A stretch of DNA of 64,000 nucleotides from Haliotis rufescens (taxonomy: Eukaryota): contig NW_025963779.1 of assembly GCF_023055435.1 (NCBI RefSeq), positions 59,768,001 through 59,832,000 on the forward strand, written 5' to 3'. The notes beneath the pieces are model-generated. The model did no database searches. It was not told the origin of the DNA and saw only the letters and a program-made list of their open reading frames with translations. The position numbers were made by a program, and so were the translations under genes. Within the stretch, counting starts at the first letter, position 1, and each line of letters opens with the position of its first letter. Shown here piece by piece: positions 3,801 to 46,000 of the stretch.

Positions 3801-6800
3801 GAAAGAAGGCAACACAAGTGGTGGTTTTCTTTGTCTGAATGTACTTGGGAACAATAAAATGACGTGAGGCGGTTGGGGACGAAACCCTTATAACAATTAT
3901 ATTATGGCCTAATGCCATCCTCAGCCGAAAGTTTTCAGAGAGACAAAAATATAAATCTAAGACGCAAGGACCCTGTTACATGGAACACTAGAACGCCCAT
4001 TAAACAAAAAAACATTAGGTAACCATATCTATTGCAACACCTTTTTCCTCAACTGTTCAACTTACAATATAAACAATAGAATATAACCCAAAACCTTTTA
4101 TATAAAAGCATGGCAACATAAAAAAATCAGAAAAAAGTCTCAAAGATCTTCGTAAAGACTGCCACAAAAATGGTCACTAATTAATAATTAACAAATTAAA
4201 TATTCTAAAAATCCCTGACCTTTTACTGATCATTAATGAATGATATTGCCACTTAAAAGAAGTTTCTGATCTATAAACTATCAAATGCTGACAAGCGTTA
4301 CACTTGTACAGGTCAAGTATACACCATGTTCTTCCTTTGATAATGTAAGTGTCGACATAATTCAGACTTCAGAGGAGAAACCTACATATGTCGTTCTGTT
4401 CTCTCAGTTCCTGTAGGTTCAGGTTATACATTGGCCACACCACCTCCTCAAAATACCACGGGGGATCTGCAGGTATGTAGACTCTCTCACTGGGGAACAA
4501 CACATCAACATATTAGTATCATGAAAACAAGGCAACAAGAAAACAGTGTCATCGATATACCTCCGCCTAATGGAGATGTTAATAAAATAACAATATAAAT
4601 TATTTGTAAATACATATGTTGTATATCTGATCATACTAAACAAAACTAGTCCTGAAGCTTGTGAGCACATGGGATATTATGGTGCACCCTGCAGATTTAT
4701 TTCTCCATGATAAGTCAACACCATAAGATTCCTTCTGTTTTTTAAATGCCGTCATTACTTCCATTCAAGTGAATTTAGGAATAGTACCAGTTCAAAACAG
4801 AACTTTTCATTTCAAAGTCTGTTGTTTAATGCTGCACTCAGCAAAATTCCAGCTATATGAGCTTCACACATTGTACCCATGTATTTCAACTGTATTTAAA
4901 GATGAAATTGAATAAAATCTTGAATAATTTTTTGGTAAAAATGAGACCCTGAATATATGATCAACACACATTAAGCATGTTGAGAGCCATCTTCCCAAGG
5001 CAAGTGTGTACACGAGCCTATATCAAAGCCTAGTTTCTACCCTTGACACATCAAGGCCGCTTTTCTTGGCTTGACCTCGTGCCACCTCATGATGATCACG
5101 AGTTGTGCCCCTTGTAATGAAAACGCGACATCCAATCAGATTCATCCCTGACATAAAACATAGGCAATCATTGGGTTTTTTTAAAAGATGATAAAAAATC
5201 CGTGTCAACAGAGACAGGCAGCAGTAAATCACTTTCATACGAAGGTGTGAACCAGTACGAAGATTTTGTGAAACGTTCTCTGATTGGACTATCGATATGT
5301 GCGATAGTCCAATCATACTTAGCACAGGAAAGTGGACTTGATGTGGCAAGGGTGGAAACAAGACTTTGATAAAAGGGCTAGTGGACGTTCTTGCCTTGGG
5401 AAGTTGTTTGAGAGCATAATTCAACACCACTTTTATTTCATCTGTTTGTTGTTTAATGCCGCACTAAGCAATATTCCAGCTTTATGATGGCAGTCTATAA
5501 ATAATCTAATCTGGGCCAAACAATCCAGTGGTTGACATTAGAATGGATCTATACAATTGAGATAGATGACATGCATGAACCAAGTCAGCAATCCTGACCA
5601 CCCAATTCCACTGGTTGTGTCTTATGACATTCATGGGTTTCTGAAGACTAATTCAAACCCAGATCTTCACAGGACTCACTTAGAAGTGTCTGACAGTAAT
5701 GTTACCTATTTTTTAAACTCTAAATTATATTTCCACAACCCCCCAAACAAGCATTTACTCGTATCCCCTGCCAAAAAATTCTGTTCTGACATGTTCTGCT
5801 GAGTGACCACTTGATGAGGAAAAACAAATTGTACACAAAAAGCAAAACTCATCAGATATGGCTAGACTGATATGTACATATATCTGTATACAGTTTGATC
5901 AAGACATATTGAACAGTCCTTCAACTATACTCTGGAAATAAAATGTGGTGGACAGAATGATTCATAGACAAAACGACTCACAATTCTTCCTCCCACCTCG
6001 TGAATGGTAATTATAAATAGTGATACAGTTCCTGAATTGATATATGATGTACATACAAAGTCTACCATTGAAACGTTGTTGATTGACACCAGGCATTAGT
6101 GGACGAAATGAAAAGTAGAAACAAAGTATCACCTCCGTCGATCTTTACACGTCTGCTTGTCAATGGTGATGAAATACTTCTTGTCGAATAACCTTGCCAG
6201 TGGACTGTAACAAAATAGTCAACTAGATATCAGTGAGTGAGTGAGTGAGTGAGTGGGTGGGTGGGTTGAATAAAATCTTGAATATTTCAGTGAAAAACAA
6301 ATTGGCAGCAAAGTATTGCTCATTTTCAATAAGCTAAACATAAGACCCTGAATAATTGCTGAACACACATTGAGAGTATAGTTCAACACCTCTTTCTTTT
6401 TATTTGTTTGTTGGTTGGTTAACTCTGCACTCAGCAATATTTCAGCTATATGATGGCAGTCTGTAAATAATCGAGTCTTGGTCAGACAATCAATGACATC
6501 AAGAGCATCGATCTACGCTATTATGATACGATACCATGTGTCAACTAAGTCTGACGACTCTATCCCGTTAGTCACCTCTTACAACAAGCAGGGGTACCTG
6601 AAGACCAAGCATCCAACATCACAAAATCTTACTCAGGGTAATAGGTATCTTTTCCATCCCCACCAAAATGTGTCACAGATATTGGCTCCCCAACCTACCC
6701 GTAGTTGAAAATAAGGATCCCCTCAATGAAGAGAAAACTTGTTGAGTTGCTTCCCTTGGTCTGTTGGTTCTGTATCCACTTGTGAACATGATTCACCATT

Positions 6801-9800
6801 GACTTCATGTCCAACGCTGATAGCTCTGTAACAGTGTGTTTATCAATCAGTTAGGTGTAAGGTACATGTATATGAATGACATGATGTCTTGTTGATGTTG
6901 TTATGGGTCAGTCTTTCATATACCAGCCACCATGCCGCATCATAAATTTATCACTAGTAAAACAAACAGAAAAACAGAAGAAGCCCGTTACCATTTCTAG
7001 AAGACCCAGAAATTATTCCATATCAGTTTGGTGAAATACATGCCTACTGCAGCGTCAAACCAGATGTGTTGCTTAGATAACTTTGTTTATTTGTTGTTTA
7101 ATGCCATCCTCTGAAATATTCTAGCTATTTGACATCTATATGAGCATTTATATAGCATCCACCTATATATGAGCATCGATCTACACAACTGGGATATGAT
7201 GACATGCATGAACAAAGTCAGTGAACCTGACCACCGAAACCTGTTAGTTGCCTCTTATGACTAACATGGATGGCTGAAGACCAACTGTAACCAGGTCGCC
7301 TTCAGCTAACCTAATCAAGAACCTTAAATGCAATTTTGCTTTACTGACATCATTTCCAGTCTAATGACATGATTTATAGTTTGGCAAACTAACATGTCAT
7401 ACACACAGGGCGTTCAGGTCACCAAGAAGGCTTTCTATTCAGTGACAATTTCTGTGTGACCTTGACATTCACTCAAAACCTTTCCACTTTAATCCGCCAC
7501 CCAATGTTTGTTGCGTATCAAATTTCACTCAATTGCAGCAAACATTCCTGGAGTTATCATCAACATTTTTGAGTGTTTGGATTGGTCTTAGGACAGTCAT
7601 AGGAAAGGATTTGCTTTGGAAAAAATCTAACATTGAATTCATTTGTCTAGTCTAAAAAAACAAAACAGTCTTGGTTCTCAGGCACTGCCCGCATCATCAT
7701 AAGGTCTGCAACGTGTTTCGTTTTTATTTCCATTTTTAAAAAATAAAAGTCTTTAAACACACGACCCTGTCAGTAAAATGCTACAATACTTAACAACAAC
7801 ATGATTTCCACGAAATTTATTGTAAACAAACTTTGGTTACATACTAGCATGAATAAAAAAAGCCAACAAACCACTGCCCGCCCATGCGATAATTTCAAAA
7901 GCCATTGCCTGAGATTCAATTCTATCATTTTTTTAAGCCCTATGTGTATACTATGCATCCCTCTCTGTCATGTCTGCATAGCTGCGTTTTCTTCTTAAAA
8001 AGCGTTTAACATGCATACACAAGACAATATGGAACATACTACAGTGTAACAAACTGGGGAACCGAGAACTACAACTTGTACAAAAATTGACAACATGATG
8101 AACTTACTTTCCCAGTTGGCATGATCTCGTTGTGGTACCATCTCCAGCCTTTCATCACAGGGATCCTAGAAAACATTCACAACAAAGTGTTAGCGTAACT
8201 TAGACAGAGGATGCACGACAGTACATTGTCAGGATTTAAAAGCATTGCCACCAAAAAGACGGCATGCAGTGCAAGGTGATTCCAGACATTTTCTCAAATT
8301 GTCACAAGTTATCTACCACATAAAGCCAAAATACCATTTGTGTAAATAATTCATCACACACATTTCAAGAATACTGTCAACAGTAGGTTTAACAGGATAA
8401 AGGGAGGTGAGGTGAAATGGGGATGAACGTCGCGTCCAAGATTATTGCACTTATATAGCAACATGCATGCGTGTATGTGTGCGTGCATGTACTAGTCTGG
8501 ACTAATGCCGATTTTATAGTGCTAATCCACTGAGATACCATGCCACAGTTTAACACTCAGACACAGTGTAGAGACTCCAAACCGACCAGTAATTGTTTTA
8601 GCCCATTTATGCCAAGCGCTAGGCATGGTAACAATAAGTACCATCTTTTAACGTCTTTTGGTATGACACGGCCGCTTTCCAGGCGGACACTCTACAACTA
8701 GATCACAGAGATAGTCCCAGGACATAAGTGTACTCTGGGATCATTGCATAAGTTCACAGGCAACAACTCTCAGGCATTGGTGCATCACACTAAATTCTGC
8801 AAATCCATCATTTTTAATGACAATTACAAAATATTTTTTCAAATTTCATATGTCATATGAAGAAGACTGTTATCCATGCTTGAAATATCATCATTCTAAA
8901 GAGATGAGTTCAGTGTGTGCCTAGTTGTGTTTGCTAGTATTCTTACTGGGGAAAAATATAAAATGTTCCTCCCTCATCACTTTTGTTATCAATAGTAAAA
9001 AAACCAATACATCCTACCTACTTTTGAGACAAATGTGACCTAAGAAACTTTTTTTATGCAGCCTAAACAGTCTTTAATTTTACAGATGTTGTGGTCTGTC
9101 TTCAATATGAACCCACCAGGAAGTAGAAGTCTTGACCCATCGCTGTAGCACCAGGAAAAGTCGCACATAGTTTCTTCACAGCAGTCGTTTTTCCACTGTT
9201 TGTTGTACTGAAAATATCAAGATCCAATTTACTCAAATCTGAGTGACTAAGAAACTGGCTCTCTTTGTATACTTTGCATTTAGTCCAGTGTCTTGCCAGT
9301 CTGAAATCCCTTCTGAACTTATTGGGTACCATAAACCACTTGCTGCCCTCTGACATTTGAGATTACATCACAAACATTCAGGGATTCCCCTGAGGAGACA
9401 ACTGATGACATATTCTATGTTGTTACTAATTCTTGGGATCAGTTGTGGACACTTAAATCAAACAGATGATCAGACAGAAAAGGCCTGTAATATAATAAAA
9501 AACCTGAGGCAGAAGTGGGCTGGCTGGGCAGGGGCTTGATTGTTGAAACTATGCAGCGTGACAAAAGAAGCAGAACCCGTCTTAACTTACATTGAGAAAA
9601 TATCCGTACTCATACTCCATGTGATGTCATCAAAGCCCTACGGAGAGCTAGTAATACGGTCACTTTGATGTGTAAAGCTATATGGTCAAGCACCTCAATG
9701 TTGCATTTCTAGTAGTATGTCTTAATTATATGTAAACGATATGTAAAGCATAGTGAAAGGCTTGCATTATTGTTTCAGAAAAGTCCAGTCACGTGATAAG

Positions 9801-10422
9801 CCTACACCCGCGGTGTGGTCACTGGAGCAGAAATTCTCGTGGACTGAGGTGAGAAGAGCTATGCTGGGGGGTTATCAGCTATTGTTTACAAACAATGCTT
9901 CAGAACATCAATGCCCTATCCCACATGGTATCGTGGTTGAGCACTCTGATTGGTAAATATCACCGTGTGGGTTTGTTTTGGTTGGAGCCTAGACCAATCA
10001 CAGCACTCGACAAAATTGAGCGCAGAGATTTTTTGTTTACTTTCGTGACCGACAGCCACGACTGAGCCAATATTTTGATGAAACCACCCGATATAGGTAA
10101 TAAATTTGAAAAAAAATGAGGCATTCAGTGAGTATGTTGAGAGAGGTGGGGAAGTTTTGTGAACACGACATGCATACATTTCCATTTAATTTAAACGATA
10201 CAGCTGATTTCTACATCGGCCAAGATGGCGAGTGATGTACCTTGTCTATTTATATATAGTATATATATATATATGGGTACAGTGTTCCAGTAATATTACT
10301 ATCCTGCTTCAGGGCCTGTGGCCTGTACCACCGACCTCAAGTGATCGTGACTTTGAATAATCTAATTACTTATTTACTTCAGCTTACCCCGATATGCCAA
10401 TTAGAAAATAGTTTCTTGCCAT
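900..10422 (-). CDS. NMRK1: Nicotinamide riboside kinase (NRK1-like), 7 coding exons, 191 aa
   Basis: Exons (- strand): 10388-10422, 9117-9207, 8108-8165, 6699-6825, 6133-6204, 4386-4489, 900-988. All junctions are GT-AG with consistent phases; total 576 nt. Translation: MARNYFLIGISGTTNSGKTTAVKKLC...MGQDFYFL...LSALDMKSM...LFIEGILIFNY.PLARLFDKKYFITIDKQTCKDRRSERVYIPADPPWYFEEVVWPMY...FLNGAQDHEKL...SQS*. It has the P-loop GxxxSGKTT, the QD and EG catalytic motifs, and the RR.R.Y...DP..YF...VWPMY signature of NRK enzymes. Confidence 0.95.
1224..1685. mobile_element. Non-autonomous Helitron/Helentron-like (HINE-type) element with internal tandem repeat
   Basis: Starts AACAAG. It has a subterminal inverted repeat (tacccccgac ~1255 vs gtcgggggta ~1673), a terminal hairpin cccccaacattttgtcggggg, and two ~161-bp internal repeats (~1310-1470, ~1471-1635). 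Confidence 0.55.
2060..3635 (-). mobile_element. Decayed Mutator-like (MULE) transposon with a frameshifted, internally deleted transposase, in NMRK intron 6
   Basis: Fragments over 2330-3340: FLYWCH-like start (IESVRGGVHLYYDGFKF), ...LYRQRHKTLPRLP...DILIFTTDKNI, ...AALPLVP..., and the MULE C-terminal TNNHLEGWHNKIKK...HPNIYEVVKLFQREQ. Degenerate inverted gccacatttc/gaaatgtggc motifs lie at both ends, and there is a 55-bp tandem pair at 3421-3530. Confidence 0.75.
8410..8715 (-). mobile_element. tRNA-derived SINE, Meta-SINE-like family
   Basis: Reverse complement of the family at 38258-38612 (gtcataccaaaagacgttaaaagatggtacttgttgttacc core). Confidence 0.7.
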
Positions 10423-10427
10423 AGTGA

Positions 10428-10703
10428 TTAGTTAGACTCGTCAAAATGGTCTTCCTTATTTTCGCCTCCCTCCGGTTTATTGGCACCAAATGCAACAGAG
10501 TTATCGCCGGTGTTCAGACGAGACAGAAATGCACCCAGCAATTTCTTGTTCAAGTGATCTGTTTGAGTTATTTTGCGTTCGTCCTTTTCGTCCTGGTTGG
10601 CAGATGCGTCTGCCTGAAGATGGGTTTCACTTATTTTCTTTTGGACACTTAACAATTCACTTTCATCTGTGTTATCCCCATGTGAGGAAACTTTGTCAGC
10701 CAT
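10428..10703 (-). CDS. Uncharacterised 91-aa small protein encoded immediately upstream of NMRK (candidate first cistron / long uORF)
   Basis: Intronless ORF MADKVSSHGDNTDESELLSVQKKISETHLQADASANQDEKDERKITQTDHLNKKLLGAFLSRLNTGDNSVAFGANKPEGGENKEDHFDESN*. The start is in a strong Kozak context (gacATGG). Composition is acidic and disorder-like with one amphipathic helical core. The stop lies 5 nt before the NMRK ATG. Confidence 0.7.
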   Translation of the reverse strand: MADKVSSHGDNTDESELLSVQKKISETHLQADASANQDEKDERKITQTDHLNKKLLGAFLSRLNTGDNSVAFGANKPEGGENKEDHFDESN

Positions 10704-12519
10704 GTCGTGTAAACAAGTACTTTGTATCTGATGCGATGCACAATCTACGCTGTATGTAAACATATAGACAGACCACAAGTTTTGTAAATGAATGCTGCCC
10801 GCATTACTCAAATACGCTGCAAGGAGCTACCAACTGGGTTGTTTTAAAATTGGTATCGTACATTGTAAACTCGGAGCCGAAAACCCAATATATTTTTTCA
10901 CTCAAAGAACAAAAATTAGGTGTTATCAAATATTAATTAGCGAAATCGTGCTGCTCATGGGGCTAAATAAATTCATTTGTTTGACAAAAGCAATTACACC
11001 ATCTACATCCACTCGCGTCCAGACACGTTTGAAGTTTGGGATCGTATTTCAGAATTTGCACATTGATGTGGTGACACTTCCTTTTCACATGTAAATATTG
11101 CAAAGTTGTAAGAAATATTGAAGTCGACCTCTTTTTCTGCGTGTAAGACTCAACAGATGGTCATAACCTATCTGTTTAACCATTTTGTTAGTTCAAAGGT
11201 AAAGTTTACAGGTAATGTGTGCAACAGACATGTTGTTTAACCAGCAGCAGATGAGAGTGGTGTAAACTTGCTATGAGAATTTTGACGCAGACTATAGTAT
11301 GTATAAATACTACCAATAATTATGTTAGATATTTAAACTGCTTGTTTTAGAAAGTTTAAAATCAGACTTCTTGACTTACTAAAGTCACCAGTGCCCTCGT
11401 CAGTGCCCTACTTCTAAGCCTATATTTCTGTGCTTTTTAGCAGCTGTTCGAGGTTTGGAATTGTTTGTTGTTTTGCTGAACTCTGCATCATTTATGATGG
11501 ACGGCTTGTAAATAATTAAGTTTTGACTAGGCCGTGTTTATGACCGTTGTCGTAATTATTATGCTCAGGGTTTTATCTTGACTTACAAACGTGGCATCAT
11601 GGGGAACTCAAATAATTTAAGGGTCACTGCAGGAAATATGAGGGTCCTTTAAAGTAATGAAATGGTGTAGTGTAATCTATGGTTTAATAATTACTTTAGA
11701 GCCTGGAATGATTAAATGATCATATGGACAGTGGTCATGACTGATGGATGAAATGAAAGATGTCCATAACTGCTCTTGATGCGCTTTAAGTAAAATGAAT
11801 ATTATTGTGTATCCTTCAGGATGCAGTATGTTCTTTTCTGCGTCCATTATCAACATTTGTGTGTAGCCTGCAACCTCGGGGTATCGCGGTACTTGTCATG
11901 TACGCTAAACGGAACAAAATGCACTCACTAACCATTATGATTATTTGTGTTCTCTCTATCAGATGTCATTTATTTGATCTAACAATGCATATTTTACTGA
12001 TAAAAATTCATTATTTACATTAGTAGCTCCGAGTAAAAGCCGGGCCTCCCGCTCAGTTTGACAAGGGAGAGAACTCCATCGTATCGCGGTACAGAGAAAA
12101 GTTGTGTATGGAGGTCCGAATTGGACAAAAAGTGGACATAATTCTACCAACCACTTGGTATGATCATGCAGGACATCAGTGATTTGTCCAGACAAGTGCA
12201 AAGACAGCACAAGTAAAATTCTAAATGTGTTATCAGCAATAGGTATTCAATGCATATTTACCGAAAAGTAAGAGAAAAATATTTTTATAAGTCAACATCA
12301 AAATATCAGAAATGATATTTTAAGATTGTTTAAAAAATATTGGATGACAATAATTTGTCACAAATTGGAAAAATGTTAAAAGTCAACAATAAATATATAA
12401 AAAGCACTCCTAGTATGCCCAAAGTATGTATTTATCTTTTGGTTAATTACTAGTGAAGAACGTATTTCTAAGTTTGGCATTATGGCCCTTATGATCTCCC
12501 AATAGATTCTGGGCACAGA

Positions 12520-12663
12520 GCGGGAAAAAATGTGCGGACTACGTAACTTCCGTTACCTCATTAGTCGCCATGAATATGCAGATGATCTAGTTCAGGTCGA
12601 TAGAGAAAGTTTACGTGGGGAACTGCGGGTTATATCGTTGGCCATTGATAGATGGGGGTAAGG
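12520..12663 (+). promoter_or_regulatory. Probable CCDC124 promoter / non-coding first exon
   Basis: CpG-richer patch with actacgtaacttccg (ETS-like cttccg) and a good donor ggg|GTAAGG at 12658, upstream of the acceptor at 13659. The assignment is inferential. Confidence 0.35.
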
Positions 12664-13047
12664 CAATATTACAACAGATGCCAGAAATATGTATCAACGG
12701 ATTAATAACTTCTTACTTACAGCAGACGGAACATTCCGAGGAAATTGAAATTGTTTACGAAGTGAGCACTTCCTGGTTACTGATTTGCATTAATAGACAG
12801 CCGCTAAGAGGCGTGTCCCTCGTGAACTATCGGAAATCACAAATGCCGCGGTACCATGGGGTCCGAGTATACTGGAGGCACATTCGTGCATTGCATAAAT
12901 CCCTGATGCTGATCTTCTACAATGTACCACAAAAGGCATAAACATGGTGAAATTAAGTCTGGACCAGACAAACCAAGGATTGATATTCACCATGTCTAAC
13001 CACCTGATCATTGCTGAGTTGACTCTTACATATCTTGTGACAAGTGA

Positions 13048-13305
13048 GGGCATGGGTGGCCCAGTTGTCTAGACGCTTCAATTCACTGTACAGAGTTGTG
13101 TCCCTATAGGGCACACCAGAAACCTATGATTGTGGATCAAATCCTGGTTTGCCCCGAGTATGTTTCCAGGTTTGTCAGCACCATACCATTGCTTATGGGT
13201 TTCACCAAAGTGGTAAAATGTCTGGGACCTACATCACTTTTGGCGTTCCGTTCCTTGAATACTGTTCACAGCATCGTTAAACCCATCTCACTCACTCACT
13301 CACTC
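13048..13305 (+). mobile_element. tRNA-Leu-like-headed SINE (diverged copy)
   Basis: Homologous to 60429-60722; ends in an (actc)n tail. Confidence 0.7.
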
Positions 13306-13695
13306 TATCCCAGAATACCCACAGATCTGGTATTTGACCCAAGTTGTGTCATTCTCCTTTCCATTTGTTTACCTTTGTATTTTGGTTTTATTTGTTTATT
13401 TGTTGTTTAACGCTGCACTTAGCAATATTCCAGCAATATGATGACAGTCTTGACCAGACAATCCAGTGATTGACATCATGAGCATCAATCTATACACTTG
13501 TTATGAGGAGAAACAAACCATACACAAAAAGCAAAACTCATCATTCCATGGCTAGACTGATATGCATCAAGCAAGTCAGATTTTAACGACAAGCATGGGT
13601 TTGCTGAAGACCTATTTGATCCCGATCTTCACTGGTCTTGTATTTTGTGTATTCTGCAGATATATCAAAGTACTGGACACAGTGATTTTTGAAAA

Positions 13696-16600
13696 ATGCC
13701 TAAGAAATTCAAAGGAGAAAACTCTAAAGCAGTGGAAGCAAGGGTACGAAGAGATGCCCAGAAATATGCTGAACAAGAAAAGAAACAAAAAGAAGCTGAA
13801 GATGAGCTTTGGAGAGATGATGACAAGCATGCTACGAGGAAGCAGCAACGGAAAGTAAGAACAAGTTGAACATCCTTATAAACTTGAAACATGTAAGCTA
13901 TATACAACAGTAAACATTTACTGAAAATACAGTCTCCATTCCACCAGTTACAGTTTGATTGTCGATATACTTTGGTCTCCTGCAAACTCAGATCTGATAA
14001 TCTACCTTGTTAACATGTTTAATCTGATGAAATAGAAGCATGAGACCCCTTCACATAATGCATATCATGTTCTCTAGGCAGTTTTAAGATAAAAGAATTT
14101 TGTGTAGAGAGCATTAACACAGCCACCAGATTATGGAGATGAAGCCATCTTTCGTCTTAAGGGAACTGTACTCATGCTCCACAAACTATACCAATGAATA
14201 TCCATAGTTTCAATATATATCTAGTGAAAGGGTTCCCTTCTGGGTGATAACTGGTGGCTTTGGAACTCCTATTACTATCAGTCTTCAGTCACTGTCTACA
14301 AAACATCAATTCTCAGCCAGTGCTACATCAGTCGTTGTTTTTTTAATCTTGTCATGGTAGAAATTAATCAAATGAATTTGGACCTGAACGCACAGCTTGA
14401 GGTTTCAAAAGATAAATTTAGCATAGTTAAATGTACAGGTAACCTACCGCGACATTGAAAACACAGTATGTTTCTCTCCATTCTACAATGACTAAATAAT
14501 AAGCGAACTCTTTGGTGTTAGCAAATATATTGAGTGAAGTGGCATATGCTCAAGCTGTTTCTTAACAGGGTAATTACTTCATTCAAACTTATGGCAGGCA
14601 CTGACAGCATGTAGCACGCCAATTTCGTAAGCTAGCGTGAGGTGGGCACCCCTAAAGAAAACTAAGCAAATGTTTCGTTCCACACCGCACGTCACTATTA
14701 TGCCATCATATAATTCATTGTGACGCAAAAGATATGACGTTACACTCGTATATAGAAAGCACCAAATAGCAAGCTCTCTGTTGTCTTCAAAACTTGAAAT
14801 ATATTCTTTTATATTATGTTTTCTGCATGATATGTATTGTCACACATCCTTTGAATTTTGTAGTAACAGCAACTTTGCATTTTGTAGCCTATAGTCATAC
14901 ATATAATTATTTAAATATTTCTACCAACAATGATTGTAAAAGAAGTACTATTCTAAAAATATTAGTTTCCCCGGTGATGTGGCTGTCAGATTGGCTGTTT
15001 CAATCAGAGGGGGTTTATTGTGATTTGAAACCTCTGATTGTCCAATCAAAATCAAGTATTTTCATGGTAGAATACATATTTATTATGCATAGGCTACATT
15101 CTATCATGGACATGTGTTTGGTGGTGTGGTAGTGTTGTGGGTAAAGCATTCACACATCACATAGATGACTTATGTGATATTGTCACAGTGTGTGAAGATA
15201 CTTCCTGGCGTCACCACCATGATTTAGCTGGTTGATCTCTTAATGTGACTTATGAGCCAACTCACTCACTGTTTGTTCAGGAGGACAAGGAGAAGAGGCG
15301 CTTGGATCAGGTGGAGAAGAAGAAGGAGCTGCAGCAGCTTCATGATGAGGAGATGAGCAAGCTGAAGAGTGCCAAGCCTGTCGCCGCTGCCAAGTTGACT
15401 CGTGCAGATATTGCAGCACAGCAGGAGAGACTCGAGGCTGCAGCAGCAGCAGGTAAAGTCTACTGAGACACCACATGTAACCTCATGTCAGGAGGACAAC
15501 TTTAGAGATCTGGGTGCTTATATCTTTGTCATTCATTTATTAAGCATGTTAAGCTCTGATGGCTTTGCCTTTGATTGTTACACACTCAGTCAACCACTGG
15601 TTTGCCTGGCCTTGGTCCTGTTATTTATGGGCTGCCATAAAGGCTAAGTGTATGGTGGATCAGTTGGAAATCACATGGTGGTGTCTTCCCTTGTAGGATA
15701 TCACATGGTGGTGTCTACCCCTGTTGGATATCATATGGTGGGGTCTACCCCTGTTGGATATCACATGGTGGGGTCTACCCCTGTTGGATATCACATGGTG
15801 GGGTCTACCCCTGTTGGAAATCACATGGTGGTGTCTTCCCCTGTTGGTTATCACATGGTGGTGTCTACCCCTGTTAAATATCACATGGTGGTGTCTTCCC
15901 CTGTAGGATATCACATGGTGGGGTCTACCCCTGTTGGATATCACATGGTGGTGTCTACCCCTGTTGGATATCACATGGTGGTGTCTTCCCCTGTAGGATA
16001 TCACATGGTGGTGTCTACCCTTTGTTGCATATCACATGGTGGGGTCTACCCTTTGTTGCATATCACATGGTGGGGTCTACCCTTTGTTGCATATCACATG
16101 GTGGGGTCTACCCTTTGTTGGATATCACATGGTGGGGTCTACCCTTTGTTGGATATCACATGGTGGTGTCTTTCCCTGTAGGATATCACATGGTGGGGTC
16201 TTCCCCTGTTGCATATCACATGGTGGGGTCTACCCCTATTGGATATTACATGGTGGTGTCTTCCCCTGTTGGATATCACATGGTGGTGTCTACCCCTGTT
16301 AAATATCACATGGTGATGTCTTCCCCTATAGGATATCACATAGTGGGGTCTACCCCTGTTGGATATCACATGGTGGTGTCTACCCCTGTTAAATATCACA
16401 TGGTGGTGTCTTCCCCTGTAGGATATCACATGGTGGGGTCTACCCCTGTTGGATATCACATGGTGGTGTCTACCCCTGTTAAATATCACATGGTGGGGTC
16501 TACCCCTGTTGGATATCACATGGTGGTGTCTACCCCTGTTGCATATCACATGGTGGGGTCTACCCCTGTTGCATATCACATGGTGGGGTCTACCCTTTGT

Positions 16601-19201
16601 TGGATATCACATGGTGGGGTCTTCCCTTTGTTGCATATCACATGGTGGGGTCTTCCCTTTGTTGCATAAACCAATGGTGGGGTCTACCCTTTGTTGGATA
16701 TCACATGTTGGTGTCTTTCCCTGTAGGATATCACATGGTGGGGTCTTCCCCTGTTGCATATCACATGGTGGGGTCTACCCCTATTGGATATTACATGGTG
16801 GTGTCTTCCCCTGTTGGATATCACATGGTGGTGTCTACCCCTGTTAAATATCACATGGTGATGTCTTTCCCTATAGGATATCACATGGTGGGGTCTACCC
16901 CTGTTGGATATCACATGGTGGTGTCTACCCCTGTTAAATATCACATGGTGGTGTCTTCCCCTGTAGGATATCACATGGTGGGGTCTACCCCTGTTGGATA
17001 TCACATGGTGGTGTCTACCCCTGTTAAATATCACATGGTGGGGTCTACCCCTGTTGGATATCACATGGTGGTGTCTACCCCTGTTGCATATCACATGGTG
17101 GGGTCTACCCCTGTTGCATATCACATGGTGGGGTCTACCCTTTGTTGGATATCACATGGTGGGGTCTTCCCTTTGTTGGATATCACATGGTGGGGTCTTC
17201 CCTTTGTTGCATAAACCAATGGTGGGGTCTACCCTTTGTTGCATATCACATGGTGGGGTCTACCCCTGTTGCATATCACATGGTGGGGTCTACCCTTTGT
17301 TGGATATCACATGGTGGGGTCTTCCCTTTGTTGGATATCACATGGTGGTGTCTTCCCTTTGTTGCATATCACATGGCGGGGTCTACCCTTTGTTGCATAT
17401 CACATGGTGGGGTCTACCCTTTGTTGGATATCACATGGTGGGGTCTTCCCTTTGTTGCATATCACATGGTGGGGTCTACCCCTTTGTTGCATATCACATG
17501 GCTGGGTCTACCCTTTGTTGCATATCACATGGTGGGGTCTACCCTTTGTTGGATATCACATGGTGGTGTCTTCCCTTTGTTGCATATCACATGGCGGGGT
17601 CTACCCTTTGTTGGATATCACATGGTGGGGTCTTCCCTTTGTTGCATATCACATGGTGGGGTCTACCCTTTGTTGCATATCACATGGCGGGGTCTACCCT
17701 TTGTTGCATATCACATGGTGGTAATGACTGTCATCTAGCAAAGATTGTATCATGCTTAGCACCGAGAACTGGTGGCCCATTACTCTAAGCGCCACGGTTC
17801 ACTGTTGCTTACCTTTGCCAAATACATACCGGTAATTGTGGGTTCGAATCCTAACTGCATAACTAAAATACTGTTCAAAAGCAAGGTTAAACCCAACTCA
17901 CTTACTCTCTGCATCACATTTGCCAACAGGTCATGCTTCATTTCATGTTTTCATGATGATCATACTACTTATGTGATGGATATTCTCAGTTGTCAGCTGT
18001 GTATGGATGACCATTTTGGGGGGTGTCTCCCTGGACCAGATGTTTGGTATGAACCTGTTCCAAATCTTTTTCCACAGCTGAGAAGCATGACAAGGAAGTG
18101 TCGCATGATGAGAAACCCCTTGAAGAAAACATCAACCGTCTGGAAATGGAGGGCCAGGAAGCAAGAACTGTAGAGGAGGCCATTTCCCTTCTCAGGTGCG
18201 AGCACTTCCTTAAGTTGTAAAATTAACTGGTTGACTTTGTGCAGGTTGTATAAGTCAGAGTTAGATTTGGTTGCAGTTTTTCGTCCCAAAGTGTAGGGTT
18301 GGTTCAGGAGGAAAGGACAGGACAATATATTTGTTTTCAATTTTCTTGGTTCAATATCTGAATTTTTGGGGAGGAGAATGAAAGGATTAATAATTGAAGG
18401 TTCCTACCTGCAACGTTTCATTAATCATTTTTTAACCTTATATGTAATTATTTAACATTGATGACCACTCTGTTGAAAATGACCACGGGTGGCCGAGTCG
18501 TCTAAGGCGCCACGATTTGCTGTGCAGAGTTGTGTCCCTTGGGCACACCAGAAACCTATGATTGTGGGTTCGAATCCCGGTTCGCCCAGATTATGTTTCT
18601 AGGTTTGTCAGCACCATACCTGTGCTCGTGTGGATTTCACCGAAGTGGTAAACGTCTGAGACCTGCATCACTTCAGGTTTTCCTCCCACATTAAGCTGAC
18701 ACGCCATGATATAACTGGAATACTGTTAAAAGCGGCGTTGAACCCAACTCACTCACTCGCCAAATGGATCAGGTGGTCAGGCTCTGTGACTTGATTGAGT
18801 GCATGTCATCATACCTCAACATTGTGGACTGTTGCACACAATATGAATCACTGGATTGTCTGGCCCAGATTTGATTATATACAGTCTGCTGTCATATAGC
18901 TTGAATATTGCTGAGTGCTGTGTTAAACAACAAACAAACTGTAGAAGGATAATGTCTGCAAGTTTCAAGATATTTTTTTTCTTTCATTTCTTTCAGTGTG
19001 AAATCAGAAAGACTTGACAGACATCCAGAAAAGCGTGTCAAGGCAGCATACACTGACTTTGAAGCTGAAAATCTTCCACGTCTCAAACAAGAAAATCCCA
19101 ATCTCCGATTATCGCAGTTAAAACAGATGTTGAAGAAAGAATGGCTAAAATCACCTGAAAACCCTCTCAATCAAAGGTCAATTGCATATAATTCAAAATG
19201 A
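13696..19201 (+). CDS. CCDC124: Coiled-coil domain-containing protein 124 (Lso2 homologue, ribosome hibernation factor), 4 coding exons, 217 aa
   Basis: Exons 13696-13854, 15281-15452, 18078-18195, 18997-19201, phases consistent (654 nt). Translation: MPKKFKGENSKAVEARVRRDAQK...EDELWRDDDKH...LEENINR...ARTVEEAISLLS...DRHPEKRVKAAYTDFEAENLPRLKQENPNLRLSQLKQMLKKEWLKSPENPLNQ, the family signature. Confidence 0.96.
15660..17722. repeat. ~2.06-kb minisatellite of 30/31-bp units in CCDC124 intron 2
   Basis: Units tcacatggtggggtctacccctgttggata (30 bp) and tcacatggtggggtctaccctttgttgcata (31 bp), with an internal 545-bp higher-order duplication. Confidence 0.97.
18485..18758 (+). mobile_element. tRNA-Leu-like-headed SINE
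   Basis: A box tggccgagtcgtctaagg, B box ggttcgaatcc, and the same body and tail as 60429-60722. Immediately followed by a partial SINE of another family (18762-18940). Confidence 0.8.
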
Positions 19202-43089: not shown

Positions 43090-46000
43090 TAGTTGCCGAC
43101 AAAAATGCACATGACTTGAAAACTGTTCAAGAACAGATCGGTGGAATTCAAATCAATAAGGTCACACAGCAAAGGTCAACCAATAGGAAGCAAGGATCGT
43201 GTCCTTCACCTCAGAATGACACAAGTGTAAGGTCACAGTCACAGAATCAGAAGTGTTAAAGAAGAAGCTAAAATCACACTGAAACCCAATGCCAGGCCTA
43301 TATTCATGACAGCAAGACCAGTGTCATATGCCCTGAGAGAGACAGTGGAGAAATAGCTAGACAAGTTGGAGTAAGATGGAGTGATTTCAAAAGTCAACTC
43401 AAGTGATTGGGCAACACCCATTGTTGTCGTTCCTAAGAAATCAAACGATGTGAGAATCTATGGGGACTATGAAGTTACCTTTAACCAGTGGATTGAAGTG
43501 GAAAAGTACTCCCTCCCGAAAGCAGCAGATTTGTTTGCAACTCTAGCAGGCAGTAAAATCTTCTCGAAAATTGATCTGACAAAAGCGTATCACCAAGTCC
43601 TGGTAAGTGAAGAAACCAAGAAGTTGCTTGTAATCAAAACCCACAAAGGACTTTACTGTTACAATCGACTGCCCTTTGGCATCGCTAGTTGTCCAGCAAT
43701 ATTTCAACAAATCATGGAACAGATCCTGCAAGGTATACCTAGAACTGTCACCTTTCAGAAAATGAAGAAAATGCCAGTTTGCACAACCCAAAATTGAGTA
43801 TTTGGGTCATGTGATCGATCGAAATGGATTGCATACAGTTCAAGAGAAGGTTGAAGCTATCACCCGAGGTACGGAACCTACAAACAGAACCCAGCTCAGA
43901 TCGTTCCTCAGAATGCTGCAATACTACGCACATTTTATCTCAAACCTATCGACGATGATTCATCCTCTCAACAATCTACTAAAGGTAAACACTAAGTGGA
44001 TCTGGACACCACAATGTCAGGAAGCTTTTAACCGAGCAAAACAAGCCTTGTCTTCAGCTGAAGTGTTGACACATTATGACCCCAAGAAGAAAATCAAGTT
44101 GGCATGTGACGCATCCAATTATGGACTAGGTCCGGTTATCTCACACATTATTGACGATGGAACTGAACAACCAATTGCATTCGCATCAAGAACACTGTCG
44201 ACCAGCGAAAGAAATTATGCCCAGATTGAGAAGGAAGCACTTTCCCTGATATATGGATTGAAGAAATTCCACGAATATCTCTATGGCCGCTCATTTACCT
44301 TAGTGACAGATCACAAGCCTCTTCTCTCAATTCTGGGACCCAAGAAAGGTGTACCAACTCTGGCAGCAGCTCGTATGCAGAGATGGGCATTAATCCTAGC
44401 AGCTTACCAATACGACATTGAATTTAGATCCACTGATCAACATTTCAAAGCAGATATGCTTTCTCGATTACCACTACAAGAAGAAAACATTCAAGATGAA
44501 GAAGACATATTCAACTTTTCCCACCTTGATACCCTACCAGTCACAGCCAAAATCATTGAAAGCGCAACCAGAAAGGACCCAACTCTATTGCGAGTCTATG
44601 CTTTCACACTGAATGGATGGCCTGCAAGTGTGACCAATCCAGACCTACTGCCATTCTTTGCAAGAAGAAATGAACTATCAGTAGAACAAGGTGTTGTACA
44701 ATGGGGACTCTGCGTGATCATACCATCCTCACTTCAGCTGAGAGTACTCGAAGAACTTCATTCAAAGCACATTGGCATTGTCAGGATGAAAGGAGTATCA
44801 AGAAGTTATGTTTGATGGCCGTCACTTGATTCAGACATTGAGAAGACTGTTAAATCCTGTGAAAATTGTACATCTGTGAGAAACATGACCTAATCCACAC
44901 CACTGCATGAATGGCCATGGCCATCACAACCGTGGGAAAGAGTTCACATTGATTTTGCCGAATACAAAGGACGAAATTACTTCATTCTAATCGATGACTA
45001 TTCCAAATGGCCAGAAGTGTACCTGATGAATTCAACAACCACAAGCAAGACAGTTGAAACTCTGCGACATATCTTTGCTACACATGGCACACCAGAACAG
45101 TTAGTATCTGACAACGGCCCACAATTCACCTAAGAAGAATTCAACACTTTTATGAAGATGAACGGAATTAATCACCTGCGCAGTGCTCTGTATCACCCAG
45201 CAACCAACGGTGCAGCGGAGACATTTGTTCAGGTATTGAAGATGCACCTCAAAACTTCAGAAAAATCTGATCCCCTGAGACAGTTAGCAAATATGTTGAT
45301 TGTGTACAGAACTACTCCTCACACAGTCACTGGAAAAACTCTGTCAGAACTGCTAGAGAAGAGAAAAATCAGAACAAGACTTGACTTGCTCCAGCAAAAT
45401 CTAAGACAACATGTTACAAAGAAACAAATAGGCCAGAAGATAACACATGATGGTGGAAACCCTACCTTGAGACAGTTTGAACCTGGAAAAAGAGTAGCCA
45501 TCAGAAGATTTAGAGGTCCAAACAAGTAGGTCTATGGTTCCATTTTGCAGAGAATCGGCCCCCTTGCTTACATTGTGGACATTGACAATCACCCCAGTCA
45601 TGTGCTTATTGATCACATCATTGTGGCTCCTAACAATGATTCAGGTAGTGCAGACATCCTTCACAGAAGAGAAATACTGTTACCAACAACTTTGCAGACT
45701 ACAAAGTCTACTTTTCCTGAGACATCACAGACCATGCCTCAGCAGCCTGCAACACCACCATCCACCACTGAGACTCCAAACGACGATGCACCATCAAGTG
45801 AGATGTCTTTCCCCAACACCACACCGGTGCCATCCATGATGATGCGACGTTCACAACGACTTCGCCTACCTCCTAAAAGACTTGATTTGTGACTTTCTCG
45901 CATTGTGACTTTTTCGCATTCTCGCATTGTGACTCTTTCGCATTTCCTCCTCCTAGTGTTGCTTAAACTTGTTCGCGGTTGTATTGTATATTCTAAACAG

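What the first reader, a model, noticed from the sequence alone, without database searches (positions are those of the whole stretch)
10388..10703. Candidate bicistronic mRNA: a 91-aa microprotein ORF ends 5 nt before the nicotinamide riboside kinase start codon
Seen in sequence: the - strand reads gacATGGCT...91 codons...TCT AAC TAA tcact ATG GCA AGA AAC TAT TTT CTA ATT GGC ATA TCG GG|gtaag. The upstream ORF and the NMRK ATG are 5 nt apart and in different frames. There is no AG between them, no polypyrimidine-rich acceptor just upstream of the NMRK ATG, and no room for a separate poly(A) site and promoter. Both ATGs have strong Kozak contexts. The upstream ORF contains several out-of-frame ATGs (e.g. 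cacATGggg, gATGaa), which makes simple leaky scanning to NMRK unlikely. The peptide looks like a real protein: acidic, disorder-like flanks around one amphipathic motif, ITQTDHLNKKLLGAFLSRLN. My unverified impression is that this motif resembles short uncharacterised proteins of other animals and fungi. Established: a few metazoan mRNAs encode two functional proteins (MOCS2A/B, ASDURF-ASNSD1, the MIEF1 upstream microprotein), and stop/start proximity is the hallmark of termination-reinitiation. Inference: an undescribed microprotein is translationally coupled to NAD+ salvage, perhaps as an NRK partner or regulator, or as a cis-acting, metabolite-responsive regulatory peptide.
Basis: partly seen in the sequence, partly recalled or inferred. 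Interest (0 to 1): 0.92.

Follow-up and report, generated by a model that had tools for sequence, protein, structure and literature searches.

The report
Conserved microprotein ORF sharing NRK's mRNA
A 91-codon reading frame just in front of the nicotinamide riboside kinase gene encodes a real, widely conserved but unnamed animal microprotein that sits on the same spliced mRNA as the kinase, an arrangement repeated in several other animals and turned into a fusion protein in mussels.

Summary
On the minus strand a 91-codon ORF (10703..10428) ends 5 nt before the NRK start codon (10422), in another frame.

The ORF is a real gene. More than 800 proteins of about 65-125 aa share an almost invariant core, R-[EK]-I-T-Q-T-D-H-L-N-K-K-L-L-x-x-F-L-x-R-L-N. 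They come from molluscs, an annelid, a hemichordate, a beetle, corals and a choanoflagellate. They have no Pfam family, PDB relative or paper.

Spliced RNA contigs from four runs carry the ORF together with NRK exon 1, spliced to exon 2 in two of them. The contigs end near 10796, beside a divergent CCDC124-like gene.

The pairing recurs. Six environmental animal loci have the same ORF followed by NRK, with spacers of 4-179 nt. Mytilus annotates an in-frame fusion. Coral-like homologues are monocistronic.

The stretch between the two AUGs is about 7-fold depleted of ATG (P about 1e-7). That points to leaky scanning, or to internal transcription starts.

The microprotein's function is unknown. 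It is disordered, with one confident helix. Binding to NRK is suggested only by the fusion and the linkage.

This is a new member of a known kind (a bicistronic gene encoding a microprotein and an enzyme), and a good lead.

The parts
10388..10796 (-). First exon of the bicistronic mRNA: leader, microprotein ORF, 5-nt spacer and the first 35 nt of the NRK coding sequence
   Evidence: contigs X3 rec14 (2259 nt) and X7 rec20 (2254 nt) cover 10388-10796 without gaps and end 2-6 nt beyond 10796. X3 rec14 and X13 rec8 continue spliced into 9116-9208.
10704..10796 (-). 5' leader of about 93 nt, with one weak-context in-frame ATG at 10763-10761
10428..10703 (-). 91-codon microprotein ORF plus TAA stop; single copy in this genome
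10512..10577 (-). Conserved core, aa 43-64 (RKITQTDHLNKKLLGAFLSRLN). AlphaFold2 predicts a helix at aa 47-65 with pLDDT of about 87-91; the flanks are disordered.
10423..10427 (-). 5-nt intercistronic spacer (tcact), identical in the four RNA runs laid
10388..10422 (-). NRK start codon and first coding exon part (MARNYFLIGISG), with the donor GG|gtaagc
   Evidence: The same exon boundary is seen in L009, L014 and L015.
9116..9208 (-). NRK exon 2 (P-loop, TTNSGKTT...)
   Evidence: (splice junction in contigs).
4387..8156 (-). Further NRK coding exons found exon by exon, at about 8156-8109, 6874-6701, 6218-6132 and 4485-4387. The last exon or exons were not mapped.
   Evidence: (tblastn with the NRK proteins of L007, L012 and L013).
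10797..11071 (.). Region of about 275 bp between the two divergent transcript ends; presumed bidirectional promoter
   Evidence: (contig ends at about 10796 and about 11072) and for the orientation of the neighbouring gene. That it is a promoter is inference.

Best explanation
The 91-codon ORF is the single-copy gene for a conserved, acidic, mostly disordered microprotein. Its only structured element is one amphipathic helix with an almost invariant sequence (R-[EK]-I-T-Q-T-D-H-L-N-K-K-L-L-x-x-F-L-x-R-L-N). It belongs to an unnamed family found across animals and in a choanoflagellate. In this genome, which an earlier unchecked note calls an abalone, it is the upstream cistron of the mRNA of the only NRK gene. 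The transcript appears to start near 10796, from a promoter region shared with a divergent CCDC124-like gene. Its first exon carries a 93-nt leader, the ORF, 5 nt of spacer and the first 12 NRK codons. Shown: both ORFs lie on the same spliced RNA contigs; the protein family is conserved; the ORF-then-NRK order recurs in six other animal loci; mussels have a fusion. Inferred: most ribosomes start at the strong-context microprotein AUG, and a minority scan past it along an almost AUG-free path of 281 nt and start at the NRK AUG (leaky scanning). One promoter would then yield much microprotein and little kinase. Also inferred: the microprotein acts in trans, docking its helix onto a partner that is functionally tied to NRK, possibly NRK itself.
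For: Sequence. Family: 8, 378 and 807 homologues. Invariant residues are T46, T48, D49, N52, L55, L56, F59 and L60. Named members are all 'hypothetical' or 'uncharacterized' proteins, from Elysia, Batillaria, Dreissena, Mactra, Lamellibrachia, Saccoglossus, Nicrophorus and Oculina. Same transcript. X3 rec14 joins 9116-9207 to 10388-10796, X13 rec8 joins 9116-9208 to 10391-10744, and X7 rec20 covers 10388-10796. There are no indels, and the stop and spacer are unchanged in four runs. Substitutions among these relatives leave the core untouched. No upstream gene on the same strand: the neighbour at 11072-11196 and 13658-13855 is on the + strand. Single copy of both genes. Conserved linkage: L007 (4 nt), L012 (8), L009 (13), L014 (32), L013 (91) and L015 (179). 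L007 and L012 are intron-less and carry AATAAA near their ends, so they are cDNA-like. Mytilus isoform X1 (XP_076105253.1 and orthologues in two other species) fuses the two proteins. The N-terminus of isoform X2 is the +1 frame of the microprotein tail. ATG depletion: 6 ATG in 2339 nt in the linked loci against 46 in 2736 nt in monocistronic homologues, Fisher P=1.4e-7. In three cDNA contigs, 1 ATG in 955 nt upstream against 76 in 3010 nt downstream. In a synonymous-codon shuffle, 4 observed against 9.4 expected, P=0.005, while monocistronic controls gave 33 against 35. The same signature is used as evidence for leaky scanning in green algae and in Drosophila stoned/Snapin (PMC11291117). Drosophila sloth1/sloth2 have a 5-nt spacer, shifted frames and experimentally supported leaky scanning (PMC9681215). 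Structure: only helix 47-65 is confident.
Against: All RNA evidence is from assembled contigs. Contigs cannot show 5' ends, isoform ratios or that one molecule carries both ORFs. The run type 'RNA' is itself a guess, supported here only by the exact intron removal. The microprotein AUG has a strong context (G or A at -3 and G at +4 in 4 of 5 loci where it is seen) and the leader is not short. Both features disfavour leaky scanning. No translation data exist for either ORF. The linked and monocistronic sets are small, and some members are closely related. The motif also occurs inside a choanoflagellate CDC123 and in other longer proteins, and the family is monocistronic in coral-like sequences. 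The partner therefore need not be NRK.
Confidence: 0.7

Rival explanations
1. Internal transcription starts. The bicistronic RNA exists, but NRK is made mainly from shorter mRNAs that start inside the microprotein ORF, where the NRK AUG is the first AUG.
For: ATG depletion is predicted equally by this model. Promoters shared with a divergent gene often have dispersed start sites (general knowledge). Mytilus is annotated with several NRK isoforms that have different 5' parts.
Against: No contig end or coverage step inside the ORF was seen apart from a break at a polymorphic site (10593) in X1. However, contigs cannot show transcript starts.
Confidence: 0.25
2. Termination-reinitiation. Ribosomes finish the 91-codon ORF, stay on the mRNA and restart at the NRK AUG 5 nt downstream.
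For: Very short spacers in four lineages: 4, 5, 8 and 13 nt.
Against: The spacing and relative frame are not conserved (32, 91 and 179 nt elsewhere). Reinitiation after an ORF of about 90-110 codons is inefficient without special elements (established knowledge). No Rfam element and no unusual RNA structure lies at the junction (z=-0.58). This model does not predict ATG depletion in the ORF body.
Confidence: 0.12
3. A cis-acting regulatory uORF. The nascent peptide stalls ribosomes in response to a metabolite and so gates NRK translation. Under this view the peptide has no function in trans.
For: Its position as a uORF. Conserved-peptide uORFs are known in metabolic genes (PMC2811004, PMC7530721).
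Against: Homologues are stand-alone genes with long 3' UTRs (L001-L004, L008, L010, L019). Others are tandem repeats (P0009, P0010), a fusion to NRK, and insertions in CDC123. The conserved core lies 27-48 residues from a variable-length C-terminus rather than at the stop codon.
Confidence: 0.04
4. Assembly artefact. Two overlapping but separate transcripts were merged by the contig assembler, so no molecule carries both ORFs.
For: The tool warns that a contig across two genes does not prove a single transcript.
Against: With a 5-nt gap there is no room for a 3' UTR, a poly(A) site and a promoter. The same join is seen in three studies and in three unrelated cDNA-like environmental contigs. 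Mytilus gene models join the two.
Confidence: 0.04

Closest known systems
Drosophila sloth1/sloth2 bicistronic gene (human SMIM4 / C12orf73), PMC9681215
   Same: Two conserved ORFs lie on one mRNA, with a 5-nt spacer, shifted frames and no IRES. The bicistronic order is kept across distant animals and broken in others. Leaky scanning is the supported mechanism there.
   Different: There both products are paralogous mitochondrial peptides, and the upstream AUG has a weak context. Here the products are unrelated (a disordered microprotein and a P-loop kinase; hhalign probability 0.08%), and the upstream AUG context is strong.
Leaky-scanning bicistrons of green algae and Drosophila stoned/Snapin (PMC11291117, PMC7896298)
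   Same: Start codons are depleted between the ORF1 AUG and the ORF2 AUG. The ORF2 AUG has a strong context.
   Different: Those loci tend to have weak ORF1 contexts and short leaders. Neither is seen here.
   Same: A conserved small protein is encoded upstream of, and on the same mRNA as, a larger conserved protein.
   Different: No sequence relationship was found. No vertebrate member appeared among the named hits listed. The pairing with NRK is not described in the papers searched.
LC8 (DYNLL) client motifs anchored by TQT (PMC6607443)
   Same: K-I-T-Q-T-D fits the TQT anchor, with D at +2 and, in this window, K at -3. The context is disordered. Some family members carry 2-3 tandem copies, as multivalent LC8 clients do (P0009, P0010).
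   Different: 10% of members have TLT and 4% SQT, although Q is the most conserved LC8 anchor residue. Position -2 is I or L in 83%, a bulky hydrophobic residue that the paper lists as unfavourable. Conservation extends 15 residues further as a helix, and AlphaFold2 starts the helix at Q47. T46..D49 also fit a helix N-capping box (my own knowledge). Binding was not tested.
Nicotinamide riboside kinase 1/2 (NMRK1/2; Pfam AAA_18/PRK hits)
   Same: The downstream ORF is an ordinary NRK. Its exon-wise matches are 33-57% identical to NRKs from other animals, and it has the P-loop, DDYF-like and YxPPDPPxYF motifs.
   Different: Nothing unusual in the kinase itself. The novelty is its upstream cistron.

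Membership tests
Eukaryotic bicistronic mRNA encoding two conserved proteins | Both ORFs lie on one mature, spliced transcript | tested here: met
   spliced contigs X3 rec14 and X13 rec8 carry the ORF with NRK exons 1 and 2, and X7 rec20 covers all of exon 1. L007, L012 and L013 are cDNA-like contigs with both complete ORFs. Caveat: these are contigs, not single molecules.
Eukaryotic bicistronic mRNA encoding two conserved proteins | Each ORF is conserved as a protein | tested here: met
   Microprotein. NRK.
Eukaryotic bicistronic mRNA encoding two conserved proteins | Both ORFs are translated from that mRNA | not testable with these tools
   No Ribo-seq or proteomics was available. The raw-read runs listed were miRNA libraries.
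Leaky-scanning bicistron | Depletion of AUG between the ORF1 start and the ORF2 start | tested here: met
   6 ATG in 2339 nt against 46 in 2736 nt in monocistronic homologues, P=1.4e-7. Synonymous shuffle P=0.005.
Leaky-scanning bicistron | Sub-optimal context at the ORF1 AUG | tested here: not met
   gacATGG (window), atcATGG (L009, L014) and acaATGG (L015). Only L013 (acaATGc) lacks the +4 G. The Kozak preferences of these species were not derived.
Termination-reinitiation coupling | Stop and restart codons overlapping or a few nt apart, conserved among relatives | tested here: not met
   Spacers of 4, 5, 8, 13, 32, 91 and 179 nt and varying frames.
Termination-reinitiation coupling | Upstream RNA element that tethers the ribosome | tested here: inconclusive
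   No Rfam hit and no unusual fold. Complementarity to 18S rRNA was not examined.
Conserved-peptide (cis-acting) uORF | The peptide is conserved only as a uORF, with the critical residues near its C-terminus | tested here: not met
   Monocistronic, fused, repeated and inserted forms exist. The core is central and the tail length varies.
LC8/DYNLL TQT-motif client | TQT anchor with favourable flanks in a disordered, strand-competent segment | tested here: inconclusive
   TQT in 84%, TLT in 10% and SQT in 4% of 225 members. The +2 residue is D. Position -2 is I or L, which is unfavourable (PMC6607443). AlphaFold2 models the segment as the start of a helix.
LC8/DYNLL TQT-motif client | Direct binding to LC8 | not testable with these tools
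   No LC8 sequence could be handed to the complex predictor under its rules.
Pfam DUF3245 (PF11595) | Score above the curated cut-off | tested here: not met
   The window ORF gives no hit. Two of 79 members hit weakly. Only the triple-repeat P0009 reaches 28.3 bits, with no single domain passing. No hit in the own genome.
Nicotinamide riboside kinase | P-loop GxSGxxNxGKT and the NRK-specific downstream motifs, in order along the gene | tested here: met
   Exon-wise tblastn. The invariant columns of A4 are present.

The most novel reading that the evidence does not exclude
The microprotein is a dedicated, so far unrecognised component of nicotinamide riboside salvage in invertebrates. Its invariant helix would bind NRK, or bring NRK to a partner or place. 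Co-translation from one mRNA would set their ratio, and mussels would have made the link covalent. The mRNA would then be an ancient two-protein unit of NAD+ metabolism.
Probability: 0.25. Interest if true: 0.8.

Novelty: new member of a known kind. Interest (0 to 1): 0.62.

Why it matters
NRK is the entry enzyme for nicotinamide riboside into NAD+ synthesis, and no protein partner encoded with it is known. Here an undescribed microprotein family is found with a 20-residue core that is nearly invariant from corals to hemichordates. It is physically tied to NRK in three different ways: the same mRNA, varied spacers in several lineages, and an in-frame fusion in mussels. That is the classic genomic signature of a functional link, and it gives a concrete, cheap hypothesis to test. 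The locus also offers a natural series for studying how animal ribosomes reach a second cistron: monocistronic, bicistronic with 4-179 nt spacers, overlapping, and fused. The contrast in ATG depletion between linked and unlinked homologues serves as a built-in control.

Tried and rejected
The genomic context of the named homologues (Saccoglossus LOC102802350, Nicrophorus LOC108562868, Dreissena, Mactra, Batillaria, Elysia, Oculina, Lamellibrachia) could therefore not be inspected.
- Pfam gave nothing for the ORF. DUF3245 was rejected.
- The protein atlas gave no usable hit.
- A PDB sequence search with the family profile found no match even at E<=10.
- Literature searches for NRK with 'bicistronic', NMRK1 with 'uORF', and the motif string found 0 papers.
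- Complex prediction of the L013 microprotein (residues 40-109) with the L013 NRK returned 'no answer' (score 0.01). This counts neither for nor against binding.
- MAFFT placed the microprotein core against an NRK segment. A profile-profile comparison shows this is chance (probability 0.08%).
- AlphaFold2 on the natural Mytilus fusion was not run, because alignments A5 and A6 misplaced the microprotein rows and the output would not show contacts.
- Rfam and RNA folding around the junction gave nothing.
- Among 54 NRK homologues of 139-263 aa, none other than Mytilus carries the motif.
- SL trans-splicing into the NRK AUG was considered, but the contigs run through without a break and there is no acceptor. 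Most loose-end rows were not shown, so it is not strictly excluded.
- The spliced NRK protein was not joined or searched as one sequence. The exons were compared one by one by reference.
Full report
**1. The observation**

The minus strand reads cacgacATGGCT, then 91 codons, then TCT AAC TAA, tcact, ATG GCA AGA AAC TAT TTT CTA ATT GGC ATA TCG GG|gtaagc. The ORF occupies 10703-10428 and the NRK ATG is at 10422, in frame +2 relative to the ORF. The open frame continues upstream to 10811 and holds one further in-frame ATG at 10763 in a weak context (tatATGt).

Both lie in the first 40 nt of the ORF. They open ORFs of 10 and 5 codons that end at 10649, which is 227 nt before the NRK ATG.

**2. Is it a gene?**

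Yes.
- The 91-aa sequence alone finds 8 proteins of 79-110 aa. They share an invariant TQTDHxNKKLLxxFL block.
- A profile of these finds 378 representatives at E<=0.001 among 1.8 billion cluster representatives, mostly 65-125 aa.
- A broader profile finds 807 proteins.
- In a 79-sequence alignment, T46, T48, D49, N52, L55, L56, F59 and L60 are invariant, while the flanks are hardly alignable.

The few members that carry names are all "hypothetical" or "uncharacterized". They come from gastropods (Elysia, Batillaria), bivalves (Dreissena, Mactra), an annelid (Lamellibrachia), a hemichordate (Saccoglossus), a beetle (Nicrophorus) and a coral (Oculina). The family has no Pfam family, no PDB relative, no atlas hit and no paper in the library searched.

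AlphaFold2 with the family alignment gives one confident helix, residues 47-65 (pLDDT about 87-91). Everything else is low-confidence. The ORF is single copy in the 1.33-Gb genome.

Among the close relatives seen in the RNA runs, the ORF stays open. Six substitutions (two synonymous; A33S, G66D, N82K, S90T) all fall outside the core.

**3. Is it on the NRK mRNA?**

Contigs of four public runs were laid on 8600-14500. The runs come from four studies and carry four species labels. Their type, "RNA", is a guess by the tool.
- X3 record 14 (2259 nt) aligns to 9116-9207 and directly on to 10388-10796. The 1180-nt intron is removed exactly at the predicted donor, so the contig is RNA-derived. It runs through NRK exon 2, exon 1, the spacer, the whole ORF and 93 nt of leader, ending 2 nt later.
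- X7 record 20 (2254 nt) covers 10388-10796 in the same way.
- X13 record 8 joins 9116-9208 to 10391-10744.
- Every difference in these pieces is one of the substitutions listed above, and there are no indels. The stop, the spacer and both ATGs are therefore identical in all four runs.

Depth falls to near zero above about 10800.

The next transcript upstream has exons at 11072-11196 and 13658-13855, with gt and ag on the + strand. Its ATG in exon 2 opens MPKKFKGENSKAVEARVRRDAQK..., which I recognise from my own knowledge as CCDC124-like. That gene is divergent. No same-strand gene upstream could own the ORF as its last exon, and about 275 bp separate the two transcript ends.

The remaining NRK exons lie downstream on the minus strand. 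NRK also appears to be single copy.

Limits: contigs show neither true 5' ends nor isoform ratios, and they do not prove single molecules. Weak coverage in intron 1 (10176-10372) was not resolved.

**4. Is the pairing conserved?**

Twenty metagenome or metatranscriptome loci encoding family members were fetched. In six of them an NRK ORF or NRK first exon follows on the same strand:

| Locus | Spacer | Notes |
|---|---|---|
| L007 | 4 nt (TAA taat ATG) | intron-less, complete NRK ORF, AATAAA near the end |
| L012 | 8 nt | intron-less, complete NRK ORF, AATAAA near the end |
| L009 | 13 nt | genomic; NRK exon 1 ends GG\|gtaa |
| L014 | 32 nt | genomic; NRK exon 1 ends GG\|gtaa |
| L013 | 91 nt | intron-less, complete NRK ORF |
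| L015 | 179 nt | genomic; NRK exon 1 ends GG\|gtaa |

The three intron-less loci are mRNA copies. In the three genomic loci NRK exon 1 ends at the same position as in the window.

In Mytilus galloprovincialis, M. edulis and M. trossulus, RefSeq and an independent annotation give "NRK1-like isoform X1" of 279-280 aa. In it the microprotein is fused in frame to NRK. The N-terminus of isoform X2 (MLNGWKQLMKQMKLPVV) is what I obtain by back-translating the X1 residues DVEWVETTDETDEITSS and reading one base later; the Mytilus DNA was not examined. The two isoforms would therefore differ by a frame-changing splice choice on the same exon.

A coral-like group (L001-L006, L008, L011, L019) is monocistronic, with long 3' UTRs and no NRK. 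In a choanoflagellate transcriptome (Stephanoeca) two copies of the motif sit in a disordered insert of CDC123. Other proteins carry two or three tandem copies (P0009, P0010).

The helix is therefore a portable module with a function in trans, and its link to NRK is frequent but not universal.

**5. How is NRK translated?**

Spacer length and relative frame are not conserved. No Rfam family and no unusual RNA structure lie at the junction. This argues against a dedicated termination-reinitiation device. Reinitiation after about 90-110 codons is also generally inefficient (established knowledge).

The region from just after the microprotein AUG to the NRK AUG is almost free of ATG in every frame:
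- Counts per locus are 2, 1, 0, 1, 0, 0 and 2, giving 6 in 2339 nt.
- Monocistronic homologues have 46 in 2736 nt, with 4-6 each (Fisher P=1.4e-7).
- In the three cDNA contigs there is 1 ATG in 955 nt upstream of the NRK AUG, against 76 in 3010 nt downstream (Poisson P about 1e-9).
- No linked ORF has an internal Met codon. The monocistronic ones have 13.
- Shuffling synonymous codons within each ORF gives 9.4 out-of-frame ATGs against 4 observed (P=0.005). The monocistronic controls show no deficit, with 33 against 35.

Selection against AUGs in the body of ORF 1 is the signature used to argue for leaky scanning in green-algal bicistrons and in Drosophila stoned and Snapin (PMC11291117). The closest animal parallel is sloth1/sloth2, with a 5-nt spacer, shifted frames and reporter evidence for leaky scanning (PMC9681215).

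Two facts fit less well. The upstream AUG context is strong (G or A at -3 and G at +4 in four of five loci), and the leader is about 93 nt. Leaky scanning would then pass only a minority of ribosomes.

Dispersed transcription starts inside the ORF would explain the ATG depletion equally well. The present data cannot exclude this.

**6. What does the microprotein do?**

This is unknown. My best inference is that it is an acidic, disordered protein whose single amphipathic helix docks onto a conserved partner. The conserved face would be T48, N52, L55/L56, F59/L60 and L63.

The fusion in mussels and the repeated co-cistronic arrangement point to NRK or the NRK pathway. A complex prediction with NRK returned no verdict, which counts neither way.

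KITQTD resembles an LC8/DYNLL anchor, with TQT and D at +2 (PMC6607443). Against this:
- 10% of members have TLT.
- Position -2 is I or L in 83% of members, which is unfavourable.
- Conservation continues as a helix.

The T..D pair also fits a helix N-capping box (my own knowledge).

A cis-acting stalling peptide is unlikely, for the reasons given in section 4.

**7. Identity of the organism**

An earlier follow-up note on this genome (s1-813617) speaks of red abalone. That agrees with the gastropod-like tail (GDNSVAFG, shared with Elysia), but I did not check it.

**8. Verdict**

The locus is a genuine, conserved bicistronic gene encoding a microprotein and NRK. It is a new member of a known kind, and it involves a protein family that has not been described.

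Noticed in passing
window 11072-11196 and 13658-13855 (+): A divergent neighbouring gene whose exon 2 opens with MPKKFKGENSKAVEARVRRDAQKYAEQEKKQKEAEDELWRDDDKH. It is CCDC124-like (ribosome-hibernation factor family, from my own knowledge). Its transcript end lies about 275 bp from that of the microprotein/NRK mRNA, suggesting a bidirectional promoter.
   Followed up: partly
window 13131-13524 and 8600-8796: An interspersed repeat with enormous summed depth in RNA contigs (up to about 150,000) and many rearranged joints. A copy at 8600-8796 is joined to it on the opposite strand. No Rfam family and no tRNA were found.
   Followed up: partly
window 15648-17788: A long tandem repeat that reads as open frames on both strands (GYHMVVSTPV... 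/ NRGRHHHVIS...). GC content is raised to 0.46-0.48. It is probably a minisatellite rather than a gene.
   Followed up: no
window 43381-44815 (+): Two adjacent ORFs (138 and 337 aa) that look like reverse transcriptase/RNase H parts of an LTR-retrotransposon pol gene.
   Followed up: no
window 52557-55280 (+): A single-exon 907-aa ORF with a long C-terminal array of C2H2 zinc fingers.
   Followed up: no
P0021 (Stephanoeca diplocostata) and P0078: The same helix motif, as TLTDRLNQKLL.. and TLTDHLNKKLL.., occurs inside the disordered insert of CDC123 (D123 domain, E=1e-44) in a choanoflagellate. This is a second, unrelated host protein for the module.
   Followed up: partly
window 10176-10372 (NRK intron 1): Low but non-zero contig depth (3-6) in three of four runs, inside the first NRK intron next to an (AT)n tract. 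It could be unspliced RNA, a repeat, or an alternative 3' end giving a microprotein-only RNA.
   Followed up: no
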